Counted from the first letter of the stretch, positions 11,187-23,596 are shown. The stretch is 64,000 bases of DNA from Hemiscyllium ocellatum (GCF_020745735.1 NC_083426.1:13144001-13208000), one strand, 5' to 3'. Notes: generated by a model not told the origin, from the letters alone. Translations and numbers: made by a program.

Positions 11187-11226
11187 ATGAAGTACATTGT
11201 GTTCCTGGTCCTCAGTCTGATATCAA
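11187..11226 (+). CDS. Ig receptor exon 1, signal peptide MKYIVFLVLSLIS
   Basis: gaaccATG context, hydrophobic core, phase-1 donor A|gtaaga. Confidence 0.88.
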
Positions 11227-14200
11227 GTAAGATTATCCTCTTCTATATTTGAATCACTGTTTACATTTATGATTTGGATCTGCTGGTGTTGGACTGGGGT
11301 GTACATAGTTAAAAATCACCAGGTTATAGTCCAACAGGTTTATTTGGAAGCACTAGCTTTCAGGGCAACGCTCCTTCATCAGATGGTCGTGGAGTACACA
11401 GTTGTAAGACACAGAATTTGTAGCAAAAGTTTACAGTGTGATATAACTAAAATTATACATTGAAAAATACTTAATTGTTTGTTAAGTGTCTCATCTGTTG
11501 GAATGACAATGTTAGTTTTACTTCTTTTATATGTAAATTACAAAACCTTTTTTAAAAGTTACATTCTCAAGTGAACTTTAACAATTGGCGTCAGCCCAGA
11601 TAATATATTGAAGGTTTTAGCCACCTGTGTGCTGCTGTCTGTTCCATAACAGTTAGACTGATTCTAATCTTAAAAAATGCATTAACAGAATCATTTGCAT
11701 TTATGTAGTTTCTTCATCTTAGAAAACTGGCTCAAAGTTCTTAACAGAGAAGGAAGAGAAACATTGATACCATGCCAAAGAAGGAGAAGTTGGGTGTACT
11801 GACCATTAGGGTAAAAAGTGAGGTCTGCAGATGCTGGAGATCAGAGCTGAAAATGTGTTGCTGGTTAAAGCACAGCAGGTTAGGCAGCATCCAAGGAACA
11901 GGAAATTCGACGTTTCGGGCATAAGCCCTTCATCAGGAATGAGGAGAGTGTGCCAAGCAGGCTAAGATAAAAGGTAGGGAGGAGGGACTTGGGGGAGGGG
12001 CGATGGAGATGTGATAGGTGAAAGGAGGTCACTTCCCTCCAAGGCCCCAAGGGATCCTTCCATATCCGCCACAAGTTCACCTGTACCTCCACACACATCA
12101 TCTATTGCATCCGCTGCACCCGATGTGGCCTCATCTATATTGGGGAGACGGGCCGCTTACTTGCGGAACGCTTCAGAGAACACCTCTGGGACGCCTGGAC
12201 CAACCAACCCAACCACCCCGTGGCTCAACACTTTAACTCTCCCTCCCAATCCACCGAGGACATGCAGGTCCTTGGACTCCTCCACCAGCAGAACATAACA
12301 ACACGACGGCTGGAGGAGAAGCGCCTCATCTTCCGCCTGGGAACCCTCCAACCACAAGGAATGAACTCAGATTTCTCCAGTTTCCTCATTTCCCCTCCCC
12401 CCACCTTGTCTCAGTCGGTTCCCTCAACTCAGCACCGCCCTCCTAACCTGCAATCTTCTTCCTGACCTCTCCGCCCCCACCCCACTCCAGCCTATCACCC
12501 TCACCTTGACCTCCTTCCACCTATCACATCTCCATCGCCCCTCCCCCAAGTCCCTCCTCCCTACCTTTTATCTTAGCCTGCTTGGCACACTCTCCTCATT
12601 CCTGATGAAGGGCTTATGCCCGAAACGTCGAATTTCCTGTTCCTTAGATGCTGCCTAACCTGCTGTGCTTTAACCAGCAACACATTTTCAGTTCTGGACT
12701 GACCATTAGCTTTGTCCAAGGGGTGGCGTTAAATATAATCCCTAGCTACAGTGTGGAAATAGATTGTTAATCAGAGAAGGAGTTGCTGAGGGCAAGGATT
12801 TTAACTGTGAAGTTCCAGAAAATTGGACCTCATTGAAAACAGAGCCACGATCAGTGGGGGAAAGGAAGCAGAGGAAGCTAGATTCAGAGAACTAGAATTC
12901 CCTCAGGGAAGGGAACAGTGGAGTATTGTAGGACATCACAGGAATTTGAGGAGATCGGTACAATTGATAAAGGAATGTACTGCCTGGAAACATAATAGAG
13001 GGAAGTTCAATTGAGGCATTGAAGAGGGCATTGGATGATTATTTGGATAAAAGAATATGGGGAAACCCAGGAGACTGGCAGAGGGTAGTGATTCTCATTT
13101 GAAGAGTTAGTGCAAGCCAAATGGACTAAATAATTCTGTTATTATGTTGTATAATCAAGAGAACAAAATGCATGCCCTTCCCTGCCTCCCTAAATGAAGG
13201 TAGAATAATGTTAAAGGAGAAAGTGAGGACTGCAGATGCTGGAGATCAGAGCTGAAAATGTGTTGCTAGAAAAGCGCAGCAGGTCAGGCAGCATCCAAGG
13301 AGCAGGAGAATCGACATTTCAGACATGAGGAATTCCTGAAGAAGGGCTCATGCCCGAAACGTCGACTCTCCTACTCCTCGGAAGCTGCCTGACCTACTGC
13401 ACTTTCCCAGAATAATGTTAAAACCAGGCAGTAAATCCATTTCTGCGAGCACCATCAATGTGGCCGGGTAAAAATAATCCTCACATAGGTTAACATCTCA
13501 GATTTACATTCTTCACCCAAATTTAAGTGCGCCCATAGTCTAACAGAATGATAGTGCAGGTAAACATGCTGCCTATGTGGAATACAATGTGAATATGAAT
13601 ATCACTTAGTTAGATTTCAATCTGTTTAACGTAACAATTATTGGTAGTTTGTGCATTTAATCAAAGCTTCCCAACTAGTACTACTGAGTGCTCTGTTTTT
13701 TTAATGAATAGCCTACATGGTGTAGCAAGCCTTAGTCCATACAGTGGAAGAGTGGGCTGCTGCCTGTGAAGTTGCATTCAAACAATAGAAGCTTCCTTCA
13801 TCACTTAAAGCTATCGTAATGGCTCCATACATCAATCAGATAATCATTTATAGGCAGTCAGCTCTATGGATTTGAAGTGATGTGCTAAATTCCACAACGC
13901 CCTTATGGTCTTGGGGTGGGAAAGTCCAGAGCTAGAGGTTTATGGTGAGAGGGGCAATGTTTTCATGCAGAGGTTGGTGCGTGAGTAAAATGGGCTGCCA
14001 GAGGAAGTGGTGGAGGCTGGTACAATTACAACATTTAAAAGGCATCTGGTTGGGTATATGAATAGGAAGGTTCGGAGTATATTCGTCCCCTTCCAATTTA
14101 GGTGCAATCCGTCCTTCTTGTACAGGTCACCTCCACGCCAAAAGAGATTCCAATGATCCAAAAATGGGAATCCTTCTCCCATACACCAGCTCCTCAGCCA

Positions 14201-23200: not shown

Positions 23201-23596
23201 TAGTCACCCTCAGGTTAAACTCACCATCAGAGCAGCTTCCGTGGCCTCCGGTGACTTTTCTTTTACTTATAGCCACAACAGTTACGTGGCTGATTCAGTT
23301 CAATTTCTCTTGATGGTGGAGGGTTCAATGCTGGCAATGTCATTCAATGTCAATTTTCATATTTTAGCGTCATGCCTCTGTTACATGTTCAAGTGTGAGT
23401 GTTATGTTTATTCCAGTCTGACAGGATAATGAAAGACACTGTCACTTATTCCAATGTGACCCTTCAGCCTTCTGCTCAAACAACGGAAGATTCTGGAACT
23501 TATGCTAACTTAAAGGATTTGAAAGAGCAAAAGGGTAGCATCAAAATCAATTCTTCGGAATCAGTGGAATATGCGGCATTGCAATTCAAATCTTAG
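11187..23596 (+). CDS. CD300/pIgR-like (CMRF35-like, MDIR-like) inhibitory receptor with two V-type Ig domains; 7 coding exons, 1059 nt, 352 aa
   Basis: join(11187-11226,15664-15987,16767-17087,18918-18951,19749-19867,21572-21612,23417-23596); all introns GT-AG; phases 1,1,1,2,1,0 match; no internal stop; SP-V-V-stalk-TM-ITIM architecture. Confidence 0.92.
11258..11710 (-). mobile_element. Second Penelope-like pLTR family fragment in receptor intron 1
   Basis: Minus strand reads ctgatgaaggagcgttgccctgaaagctagtgcttccaaataaacctgttggactataacctgg, a hammerhead-like core followed by a poly(A) signal. Confidence 0.65.
11905..11940 (-). ncRNA. Minimal type I hammerhead ribozyme motif (antisense copy)
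   Basis: Exact reverse complement of 12598-12633. Confidence 0.7.
12598..12633 (+). ncRNA. Minimal type I hammerhead ribozyme motif
   Basis: ATTC-CTGATGA-A-GGGC(ttat)GCCC-GAAA-C-GTC-GAAT; stem I ATTC/GAAT, stem II GGGC/GCCC, palindromic ACGT in place of helix III. Confidence 0.75.
13216..13408. mobile_element. Penelope-derived fold-back mini-element with a + strand hammerhead motif at 13332-13367 (CTGAAGA variant)
   Basis: Inverted arms; 14-bp TSD agaataatgttaaa at 13202-15 and 13409-22. Confidence 0.88.
13925..14072 (+). mobile_element. CR1 3' fragment joined to an oppositely oriented CR1 5' part
   Basis: gggctgccagaggaagtggtggaggctggtacaattacaacatttaaaaggcatctgg. Confidence 0.8.
14073..15500 (-). 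mobile_element. CR1 5' UTR plus ORF1 (SGNH/GDSL esterase-type), decayed, in receptor intron 1
   Basis: IVLGDSLVRG and WLRSWCMGEGFPFLDHWNLFWRGGDLYKKDGLHLNWKGTNIL, typical of CR1 ORF1 esterase domains. Confidence 0.88.
15664..15987 (+). CDS. Ig receptor exon 2, V-type Ig domain 1 (B-strand Cys replaced by Phe)
   Basis: Acceptor tttcacccaacag, donor G|gtaaga; GKSITVQFPW..MWCKSYSETKC..NTGTYWCG. Confidence 0.93.
16767..17087 (+). CDS. Ig receptor exon 3, V-type Ig domain 2
   Basis: Acceptor tttaccaacag, donor G|gtaaga; IIVSCLY..KFFCKVTSVNNC..KGRV..FTVTMSNITKADKGQYWCG; Cx7C C-C' pair. Confidence 0.95.
18918..18951 (+). CDS. Ig receptor exon 4, 34-nt stalk (V)GIPAISSDNL(S)
   Basis: Acceptor tttatttgcaacag, donor AG|gtaaga; supplies the phase 1 to 2 change needed between exons 3 and 5. 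Confidence 0.82.
19749..19867 (+). CDS. Ig receptor exon 5, transmembrane segment IIIPALLGLLILSLLILFLW followed by KRKGIKR
   Basis: Acceptor ttttcttttag, donor G|gtacgt; uncharged TM and basic stop-transfer cluster. Confidence 0.93.
21572..21612 (+). CDS. Ig receptor exon 6, cytoplasmic (V)KNENPETPDMTTK
   Basis: Acceptor tttattttacag, donor AAG|gtaaga; phase 1 to 0. Confidence 0.85.
22147..22421 (+). mobile_element. HE1-type tRNA-derived SINE
   Basis: gcagtacggtggctcagtggttagcactgc...ggttcgatt-like B box...gcttccacactgaagggattctatg. Confidence 0.88.
23417..23596 (+). CDS. Ig receptor exon 7, cytoplasmic tail with ITIMs VTYSNV and VEYAAL plus GTYANL; stop TAG
   Basis: Acceptor tttattccag, phase 0; matches ORF 23399-23596 of the track. 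Confidence 0.92.
   Translation, partial: SDRIMKDTVTYSNVTLQPSAQTTEDSGTYANLKDLKEQKGSIKINSSESVEYAALQFKS

What the first reader, a model, noticed from the sequence alone, without database searches (positions are those of the whole stretch)
11187..23596. Complete two-V-domain ITIM receptor of the CD300/pIgR/TREM family in a shark-like genome
Seen: seven exons splice in phase into 352 aa: MKYIVFLVLSLIS / V1 / V2 / 12-aa stalk / uncharged TM / tail with VTYSNV, GTYANL and VEYAAL. Both domains carry the extra C-C' cysteine pair (WCx7C, FCx7C). Established: that pair marks CD300, pIgR, FCMR/FCAMR, TREM and the skate MDIR receptors, and V/I/L/S-x-Y-x-x-L/V is the ITIM consensus. Mammalian CD300s have one domain and pIgR has no ITIMs. 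Inference: this is an inhibitory leukocyte receptor that may represent an early branch of the family, in a lineage where a true pIgR is generally reported to be missing.
Basis: partly seen in the sequence, partly recalled or inferred. Interest (0 to 1): 0.75.

Follow-up and report, generated by a model that had tools for sequence, protein, structure and literature searches.

The report
Shark two-domain CD300-like inhibitory receptor
This is a real, intact epaulette-shark gene for a cell-surface immune "brake" receptor with two antibody-like domains; public annotation already predicts it, and sharks, rays and a chimaera carry relatives, so it is a well-formed member of a known kind, not a new system.

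Summary
Seven exons with canonical AG/GT sites (11187-23596, + strand) splice in phase into 352 aa. The product is letter-for-letter RefSeq XP_060701239.1, "CMRF35-like molecule 1 isoform X1" of Hemiscyllium ocellatum.

It has a signal peptide, two V-set domains that each carry the extra C-C' cysteine pair, a short stalk, an uncharged TM and a tail with two canonical ITIMs (VTYSNV, VEYAAL). The third motif, GTYANL, is not an ITIM; it is a conserved YxN site.

The gene is not an isolated early branch:
- It has orthologues of at least 90% identity in two bamboo sharks (dN/dS 0.38).
- It has 33-52% identical relatives in many sharks and rays, with the same tail.
- A skate orthologue has the same seven exons and the same tail-to-tail AHCYL1 neighbour.
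- Arg-TM "activating" sister forms reach back to the elephant shark.

By profile score both domains are nearer to mammalian CD300 than to any single pIgR domain. Nothing supports a pIgR role.

One new detail: V1 of the epaulette and bamboo sharks has lost the canonical B-strand cysteine and a core aspartate.

Read-level RNA evidence could not be obtained. The comparison with skate MDIR sequences was not possible. Earlier notes of this scan place other CD300/MDIR-like genes upstream on the same DNA.

The parts
11187..11226 (+). Exon 1: start codon and signal peptide (MKYIVFLVLSLIS plus 1 nt), donor GTAAGA, phase 1
   Evidence: AlphaFold predicts a helix over residues 2-12. The exon is conserved in Chiloscyllium punctatum locus L001.
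15664..15987 (+). Exon 2: V1, a V-set domain with the extra C49-C57 pair and C101. It has F36 in place of the canonical B-strand Cys and N95 in place of the core Asp.
   Evidence: Pfam V-set E=1.4e-9. PDB hits are pIgR and CD300. Column check against 14 family V1 domains. pLDDT about 80-90.
16767..17087 (+). Exon 3: V2, a V-set domain with the canonical C143-C210 pair and the extra C157-C165 pair. RefSeq isoform X2 uses a cryptic donor inside the C157 codon (exon end 16871).
   Evidence: Pfam V-set E=1.5e-8. The acceptor at 16767 is fixed by identity to P0159. The isoform X2 sequence is P0118.
18918..18951 (+). Exon 4: stalk (VGIPAISSDNL), 34 nt, phase 1 to 2
   Evidence: Conserved in L001 with AG/GT. 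The equivalent exon is present in the Amblyraja locus L003.
19749..19867 (+). Exon 5: uncharged transmembrane helix (IWHIIIPALLGLLILSLLILFLW) and KRKGIKR stop-transfer
   Evidence: AlphaFold predicts a helix over 243-271. There are 0 non-synonymous differences from C. punctatum.
21572..21612 (+). Exon 6: 41-nt cytoplasmic exon (VKNENPETPDMTTK)
   Evidence: Conserved in L001 and in L003.
23417..23596 (+). Exon 7: tail with ITIM VTYSNV (Y304), YxN motif GTYANL (Y322), ITIM VEYAAL (Y345) and the stop codon
   Evidence: Motif conservation in 14 shark and ray proteins. dN/dS 0.26.
44000..64000 (-). Neighbouring gene AHCYL1 (3' part), tail-to-tail with the receptor gene. It serves as the synteny anchor.
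   Evidence: The C-terminal exon, ending ...[10 protein letters not shown], lies at about 45.3 kb and a further exon at about 56.4 kb, both on the - strand. The same arrangement, with an AdoHcyase gene, is seen in Amblyraja.

Best explanation
The stretch is the intact epaulette-shark gene LOC132828281. It encodes a 352-aa type I membrane receptor with two CD300/pIgR-type V domains. It is the inhibitory member of a receptor family found across cartilaginous fishes, whose other members carry an arginine in the membrane anchor.

Shown here:
- the exon structure and the domain types;
- the conservation of two ITIMs and a central YxN motif from rays to sharks;
- purifying selection on the gene;
- a conserved position beside AHCYL1.

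Inferred from established ITIM biology (as for CD300A and CD300F):
- When the ectodomain engages its ligand on a leukocyte, Src-family kinases phosphorylate Y304 and Y345.
- The phosphorylated motifs recruit SHP-1/SHP-2 (possibly SHIP) and damp signalling from ITAM-coupled receptors, including the Arg-TM relatives.
- The YxN site could dock a Grb2-like adaptor, as in CD300F.

The ligand is unknown. Because both domains score nearest to CD300, a lipid or other non-Ig ligand is my first guess.
For: - Gene model: the window's model is identical to XP_060701239.1.
- Domains: V-set domains with the C-C' pair. AlphaFold gives two confident Ig domains, a TM helix and a disordered tail.
- Tail: the pattern ITIM / Y[AS]N / ITIM is kept in 14 full-length shark and ray proteins.
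- Arg-TM forms: found in Scyliorhinus, Mustelus, Hypanus, Hemitrygon, Mobula and Callorhinchus.
- Family tree: it follows the shark/ray split.
- Close orthologues: 91-93% identical in Chiloscyllium.
- Selection: all 7 exons and their splice sites are kept in C. punctatum DNA. dN/dS is 0.38, with 24.5 non-synonymous of 42 changes against 78% expected if neutral (binomial p about 0.002-0.005).
- Skate orthologue: same 7 exons and the same tail-to-tail AdoHcyase-family neighbour.
- Nearest solved relatives: profile scores to CD300 chains are 51-64 bits, against 19-47.5 bits for any single pIgR domain or single-domain chain.
- Expression, indirect only: run X1, possibly RNA, holds 0.43 of the words of V1 plus intron 2 plus V2. 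I predicted 0.42 for the two exons alone, 1.0 for DNA, and 0.26 for isoform X2.
Against: - No read-level RNA evidence.
- No biochemical data exist for any family member that I could find.
- V1 has lost the canonical Cys and a core Asp, and the gene sits on a long branch (0.64 against a median of 0.1). The ectodomain may therefore work differently from its relatives.
- RefSeq also predicts isoforms that drop most of V2 (Hemiscyllium X2) or all of V1 (C. punctatum X2).
- The cell type that expresses the gene is unknown.
Confidence: 0.8

Rival explanations
1. It is the cartilaginous-fish counterpart of pIgR. On this reading it is a two-domain receptor, like the teleost pIgR, that binds polymeric IgM/J chain and carries it across epithelia or takes it up.
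For: - RefSeq names most relatives 'polymeric immunoglobulin receptor-like'.
- The best whole-chain PDB and Foldseek matches are pIgR.
- The V1-V2 tandem aligns to human pIgR D4-D5.
- In a domain tree without mammalian CD300, the family groups with tetrapod pIgR D1/D3, with D4 joining next (95/62 and 89/94, not starred).
- A 2014 survey found no pIgR in sharks (PMC4016189).
Against: - The high pIgR scores are sums over five domains. Domain by domain, CD300 chains score 51-64 bits and pIgR domains 19-47.5 bits.
- The tail is a conserved ITIM/YxN/ITIM tail.
- The family has Arg-TM activating forms, the mark of paired leukocyte receptors.
- The visible neighbour is AHCYL1. From my own knowledge, human AHCYL1 lies at 1p13, not in the PIGR/FCAMR/FCMR region at 1q32.
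- No binding data exist.
Confidence: 0.07
2. In the epaulette and bamboo shark lineage the gene is losing function. On this reading V1 is a decaying domain, the mis-spliced isoforms are the main products, and the intact reading frame is a leftover.
For: - Among 14 family V1 domains, F36 (canonical Cys lost) and N95 (core Asp lost) occur only in Hemiscyllium and Chiloscyllium.
- The terminal branch is long.
- Predicted isoforms remove most of V2 or all of V1.
- V2 dN/dS is 0.66.
Against: - The frame and all 12 splice sites are intact in Hemiscyllium and in C. punctatum DNA, and the protein is full length in C. plagiosum.
- Overall dN/dS is 0.38, significantly below 1.
- The TM exon has 0 non-synonymous changes, and the tail has dN/dS 0.26 with every tyrosine motif kept.
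- F36 and N95 are shared by three species, so they have been carried for the whole history of that lineage without further decay.
- Run X1's share of words fits full-length V1 and V2 exons (0.43 against 0.42), not isoform X2 (0.26).
Confidence: 0.08

Closest known systems
Mammalian CD300A / CD300F (CMRF35-like molecules; inhibitory CD300 receptors)
   Same: - The V-set domain carries the extra C-C' disulfide.
- They give the best per-domain profile scores: 51-64 bits for CLM-1, CLM-6, CD300A and CD300F.
- The tail is long, with ITIMs. In CD300F it also has a Grb2-type site, and SHP-1/2 recruitment is reported (PMC7247439).
- They are paired with activating relatives that have a charged TM.
   Different: - This protein has two V domains in tandem, not one.
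- It lies beside AHCYL1, not in a CD300 cluster. That the human cluster is at 17q25 is from my own knowledge.
- V1 lacks the canonical disulfide.
- Lipid binding is untested.
pIgR (tetrapod five-domain; teleost two-domain, PDB 5f1s)
   Same: - The V domain is of the same superfamily, with the C-C' pair.
- Teleost pIgR also has two domains and is of similar size.
- The V2 segment RHYKKFFC aligns with the D1 segment RHTRKYWC of human pIgR.
   Different: - Per-domain scores are lower than for CD300.
- The tail is an ITIM tail. That pIgR tails carry sorting signals, not ITIMs, is established knowledge, not tested here.
- The family has Arg-TM activating forms.
- There is no evidence of Ig binding.
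Skate MDIRs (modular domain immune-type receptors, Raja eglanteria; Cannon et al. 2006)
   Same: - They are a cartilaginous-fish multigene family of activating/inhibitory receptors whose Ig domains resemble CD300, TREM/TLT and pIgR (as described in PMC3031540).
- From memory of the 2006 abstract, MDIR2 and MDIR3 carry ITIMs and MDIR1 has a charged TM residue.
   Different: - I could not obtain the MDIR sequences or the paper, so orthology to MDIR2/3 is untested.
- In my domain tree the four-Ig 'pIgR-like' proteins of Leucoraja and S. torazame, which are possible MDIR-type genes, fall in the other half of the tree from this two-V family.
RefSeq-predicted orthologues ('polymeric immunoglobulin receptor-like' / 'CMRF35-like molecule') in sharks and rays
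   Same: - They share the two-V architecture, and the ITIM forms share the tail.
- Chiloscyllium: 91-93% identity.
- Other sharks and rays, including Amblyraja, Pristis, Hypanus, Mobula, Carcharodon, Cetorhinus, Scyliorhinus, Mustelus, Heptranchias, Pristiophorus and Heterodontus: 33-52%.
- Amblyraja has the same 7 exons and the same AHCYL1-type neighbour.
   Different: - All are computational predictions without functional study.
- Only the epaulette and bamboo shark proteins have F36 and N95 in V1.

Membership tests
CD300 (CMRF35-like) receptors | IgV domain with a second, C-C' disulfide in addition to the canonical one | tested here: met
   C49/C57 in V1 and C157/C165 in V2. V2 also has the canonical pair C143/C210. 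V1 has lost the canonical B-strand Cys (F36).
CD300 (CMRF35-like) receptors | Sequence nearest to CD300 V domains | tested here: met
   Family profiles score 51-64 bits on CD300A, CD300F, CLM-1 and CLM-6 chains. They score 19-47.5 bits on single pIgR domains and chains, 31-49 on FCMR and 44-48 on NKp44. TREM2 scores about 40 with the V1 profile.
CD300 (CMRF35-like) receptors | A single extracellular V domain | tested here: not met
   There are two tandem V domains. They are sisters in the domain tree (97/92*), so they arose by a duplication in the chondrichthyan stem.
CD300 (CMRF35-like) receptors | Orthologous genomic position (the CD300 cluster) | tested here: inconclusive
   Only AHCYL1 is visible as a neighbour. 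Wider synteny is not visible with these tools.
pIgR | Tandem pIgR-type V domains (2 in teleosts, 4-5 in tetrapods) | tested here: met
   Two domains; the best whole-chain PDB and Foldseek matches are pIgR.
pIgR | Cytoplasmic tail for sorting and transcytosis, without ITIMs; no activating counterpart | tested here: not met
   Two conserved ITIMs plus a YxN site. Arg-TM sister forms exist in six genera.
pIgR | Binds polymeric Ig / J chain | not testable with these tools
   No binding data; a wet-lab assay is needed.
MDIR (skate modular domain immune-type receptors) | Sequence orthology or clustering with Raja eglanteria MDIR1-5 | not testable with these tools
   No MDIR sequence came back from the protein searches. 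The 2006 paper is not held.
MDIR (skate modular domain immune-type receptors) | Cartilaginous-fish multigene family with CD300/pIgR/TREM-like Ig domains and ITIM or charged-TM variants | tested here: met
   The family includes ITIM and Arg-TM forms. V-set genes flank the relatives in Callorhinchus and Amblyraja. This is a resemblance in kind, not proof of membership.
ITIM-bearing inhibitory receptors | At least one cytoplasmic (S/I/V/L)xYxx(I/V/L) motif behind an uncharged TM | tested here: met
   VTYSNV and VEYAAL fit; GTYANL does not (G at -2). Both ITIMs are conserved in sharks and rays.
ITIM-bearing inhibitory receptors | Phosphotyrosine-dependent recruitment of SHP-1/SHP-2/SHIP | not testable with these tools
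   Inferred from the motifs only.

The most novel reading that the evidence does not exclude
This two-V family, with its ITIM and Arg-TM forms, is anchored beside AHCYL1 in an epaulette shark and a skate and is present in a chimaera. The most novel reading is that it is the cartilaginous-fish survivor of the ancestral CD300/pIgR-type locus. From my own knowledge, human TMIGD3, a CD300-like gene, lies about 1.5 Mb from AHCYL1 at 1p13. On this reading one or both V domains bind immunoglobulin (IgM/J chain), which would make the family a proto-Fc/poly-Ig receptor with signalling tails in a lineage said to lack pIgR and Fc receptors.
Probability: 0.08. Interest if true: 0.75.

Novelty: new member of a known kind. 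Interest (0 to 1): 0.3.

Why it matters
The practical value is modest. The work gives a checked exon model for one shark inhibitory receptor. It also shows that the receptor belongs to a family found across cartilaginous fishes, with paired brake and accelerator forms, which public databases name inconsistently ('pIgR-like', 'CMRF35-like', 'uncharacterized'). I found no paper on it.

The family is a defined candidate for anyone looking for shark receptors for lipids or for IgM. It has a fixed genomic anchor (AHCYL1) and a tail conserved between sharks and rays.

The loss of the canonical disulfide in V1 in the epaulette and bamboo sharks, with selection still acting on the gene, is a small natural experiment on V-domain stability.

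Tried and rejected
- The search for homologous proteins with V2 alone gave nothing. That came from the length filter, not from absence of relatives.
- My first exon guesses were wrong, and identity to P0118/P0159 corrected them. I had taken the V2 acceptor as 16791 (correct: 16767) and the stalk as 17281-17317 (correct: 18918-18951).
- I searched the window for an alternative Arg-TM exon of the kind seen in relatives. No credible hit appeared; the best hit contains a stop and lies inside AHCYL1. None was found in the Amblyraja locus either.
- The domain trees place the family next to tetrapod pIgR D1/D3/D4. No mammalian CD300, FCMR, FCAMR, TREM or TMIGD3 sequence could be brought in, and the profile scores point to CD300. 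I therefore do not rely on that placement.
- The whole-protein Foldseek searches and the Atlas search only repeat 'pIgR-like two-V protein'.
- The MDIR paper (PMC3701310), a Litman-lab review (PMC2823954) and the zebrafish PIGRL paper (PMC3962068) are not held.
P0097 is not on record.
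Full report
**What is in the sequence.** I read the + strand between 11.1 and 23.7 kb and rebuilt the gene exon by exon. The exons are:
- 11187-11226
- 15664-15987
- 16767-17087
- 18918-18951
- 19749-19867
- 21572-21612
- 23417-23596

All acceptors are AG, all donors are GT, and the phases fit. The 1059-nt CDS gives 352 aa. Two of my first guesses were wrong: a V2 acceptor at 16791 and a stalk exon at 17281-17317. A representative search returned a protein from this very locus (P0118, RefSeq isoform X2), and a word search then returned the full-length model (P0159), which corrected them. 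My final model is identical to P0159. That protein is XP_060701239.1, 'CMRF35-like molecule 1 isoform X1' of Hemiscyllium ocellatum, gene LOC132828281.

**Anatomy of the protein.**
- Both large exons are Pfam V-set domains above the curated cut-off.
- Each has the extra cysteine pair, C49/C57 and C157/C165.
- AlphaFold, run on a 12-sequence family alignment, gives two confident Ig domains (pLDDT about 75-90), a TM helix at 243-271 and a disordered tail.
- The TM has no charged residue.
- The tail has three tyrosines. VTYSNV and VEYAAL fit the ITIM consensus. GTYANL does not, because it has G at -2; it is a YxN motif.
- There are six N-glycosylation sequons in the ectodomain and stalk.

V1 has F36 where the canonical B-strand cysteine should be, and N95 where the core aspartate before the F-strand Y-x-C should be. 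Among 14 family V1 domains, both changes occur only in Hemiscyllium and Chiloscyllium. The protein therefore has seven cysteines, and C101 has no canonical partner. This is unlikely to be an assembly slip. DNA runs from several samples (S3, S4, S6, S7, one study) hold 0.99-1.00 of the sampled words of the exon region. Both bamboo-shark species show the same residues.

**Is the gene alive?**

The 90% cluster of P0159 contains full-length 352-aa orthologues from Chiloscyllium plagiosum and C. punctatum, at 91-93% identity. I fetched C. punctatum DNA (L001). All seven exons are present without gaps, with AG/GT kept at every splice site.

Nei-Gojobori dN/dS against the window:

| Region | dN/dS |
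|---|---|
| Whole CDS | 0.38 |
| V1 | 0.38 |
| V2 | 0.66 |
| Stalk + TM | 0 |
| Tail | 0.26 |

Over the whole CDS there are 17.5 synonymous and 24.5 non-synonymous changes, whereas neutrality predicts 78% non-synonymous (binomial p about 0.002-0.005). The gene is under purifying selection in this lineage despite the odd V1.

Direct RNA evidence failed. 

One indirect test was possible. Before the second run search, I worked out what share of the words of V1 + intron 2 + V2 each kind of run should hold:
- 0.42 for a run holding only the two exons;
- 0.26 for isoform X2;
- 1.0 for DNA.

Run X1, from the same species and flagged 'RNA? (a guess)', holds 0.43. For the 8-kb stretch it holds 0.13, against 0.106 expected for exons alone. 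This fits a spliced full-length transcript but is not proof.

**The family.** A profile search with 12 relatives found 23 shark and ray proteins with E-values of 1e-99 or better, of which two are this gene's own isoforms. The genera are Mustelus, Scyliorhinus, Carcharodon, Cetorhinus, Heptranchias, Pristiophorus, Pristis, Hypanus, Hemitrygon, Mobula and Amblyraja. Heterodontus, Leucoraja and Narcine came from the representative search. Most are named 'polymeric immunoglobulin receptor-like'.
- Fourteen full-length proteins share the tail layout: (I/V)xYS(T/A/N)(V/I), then Y(A/S)N, then VEY(S/A)x(L).
- Others have a short tail and an arginine in the TM, in a W-x-x-(F/I/L)-R-W motif. These are in Scyliorhinus, Mustelus, Hypanus, Hemitrygon and Mobula and in the elephant shark Callorhinchus.
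- The whole-protein tree separates rays from sharks (98/94*). It puts the window gene in the unresolved shark part, on a long branch (0.64 against a median of 0.1).
- In Hypanus the ITIM form and the Arg-TM form have identical V1 and V2 domains and are annotated as isoforms of one locus.
- I found no Arg-TM exon in the window or in the skate locus.

**Orthology by position.** In the window, AHCYL1 lies on the - strand from about 44 kb onward, tail-to-tail with the receptor gene. No other called gene lies within 10 kb of the receptor on either side. In the thorny skate, the 354-aa ITIM orthologue has the same seven-exon layout over 9 kb. About 9 kb downstream it is followed by a - strand AdoHcyase-family gene, and another V-set gene lies upstream. 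In Callorhinchus the Arg-TM gene sits among further V-set genes. Earlier notes of this scan are unchecked by me except for AHCYL1 and the species. They place other CD300/pIgR/MDIR-like genes from just upstream of this window out to about 750 kb. This gene would then be the last of a large cluster.

**What it is closest to.**

Whole-chain searches put pIgR first, but that score sums five domains. With family profiles of V1 and V2 the per-domain scores are:

| Target | Bits |
|---|---|
| CD300 chains (CLM-1, CLM-6, CD300A, CD300F) | 51-64 |
| Single pIgR domains within whole chains | 19-40 |
| Single-domain pIgR chains | 34-47.5 |
| FCMR | 31-49 |
| NKp44 | 44-48 |
| TREM2 (V1 profile only) | about 40 |

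A careful domain tree shows V1 and V2 as sister clades, each containing the Callorhinchus domain (97/92*). The tandem therefore arose once, before chimaeras and elasmobranchs split. The same tree places the family beside tetrapod pIgR D1/D3/D4 and away from the four-Ig 'pIgR-like' proteins of skate and catshark. It contains no mammalian CD300, FCMR, FCAMR, TREM or TMIGD3, and I could not import those sequences, so I do not use it to choose between CD300 and pIgR. RefSeq's 'CMRF35-like molecule 1' is a fair label. 'pIgR-like' is a superfamily label, not a statement of function.

**How it most likely works.** The architecture is that of an inhibitory leukocyte receptor. The ITIM steps are inferred from established ITIM biology and from CD300A/CD300F. 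In those receptors phosphorylated ITIMs recruit SHP-1/SHP-2, and CD300F also signals through Grb2 and PI3K sites (PMC7247439). The conserved YxN site could be a Grb2-type site. The Arg-TM relatives would pair with an acidic-TM adaptor and give the opposite signal. The ligand is not known. A lipid ligand, by analogy with CD300, is my first guess, and an immunoglobulin ligand is the more interesting minority reading.

**Comparison with the literature.** Akula et al. 2014 found no pIgR or Fc receptor homologues in sharks (PMC4016189). MDIRs of the clearnose skate are described as activating/inhibitory multigene receptors with domains like CD300, TREM/TLT and pIgR (PMC3031540). I found no paper on this two-V family in sharks.

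**Verdict.** The interpretation as an inhibitory CD300/pIgR-superfamily receptor is supported. The claims of novelty and of an early branch are not. It is a new, uncharacterised but already annotated member of a known kind. Three points add something: the disulfide-less V1 of hemiscylliid sharks, the tail conserved across sharks and rays, and the conserved AHCYL1 anchor.

Noticed in passing
window 44000-64000 (- strand): The 3' part of AHCYL1 is here. The last coding exon, ending ...[10 protein letters not shown], lies at about 45.3 kb and another exon (…NLYCCRES…) at about 56.4 kb. The gene is tail-to-tail with the receptor gene. Amblyraja radiata has the same arrangement.
   Followed up: partly
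window 11842-12031 and 12507-12696 (intron 1): A 190-nt inverted repeat, 98% complementary, with 475 nt between the arms. A 74-nt core of it recurs at 13271-13405. ORF-like copies of the same element also lie near 24.1-24.5 kb. It looks like a SINE or foldback transposon family.
   Followed up: partly
window 802-2457 and 3982-4902: A low-GC (25-30%) CA/CT-rich low-complexity tract is interrupted by four N runs (1058-2457). It is followed by GC-rich minisatellites with units of 34-46 bp; the array at 4362-4902 has 15.9 copies of a 34-bp unit.
   Followed up: no
window 16871/16872 (inside V2); C. punctatum protein P0203: RefSeq isoform X2 (P0118, 280 aa) uses a GT inside the C157 codon as donor and removes residues 157-228 of V2. 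C. punctatum has a predicted isoform that skips V1 entirely. It is unknown whether either is more than splicing noise.
   Followed up: partly
proteins P0165/P0097 (Hypanus sabinus) and P0169/P0177 (Mobula birostris): In Hypanus the ITIM form and the Arg-TM form have identical V1 and V2 domains, and in both rays the two forms are annotated as isoforms of one locus. One locus may therefore yield both inhibitory and activating receptors by alternative 3' exons. The Hypanus gene call spans about 50 kb and overlaps a second call.
   Followed up: partly
protein P0201 (Chiloscyllium plagiosum), residue 72: The C. plagiosum orthologue has a new cysteine (HCAT in place of HGTT) in V1. That gives the domain an even number of cysteines again.
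   Followed up: no
They lie outside all exons.
   Followed up: no
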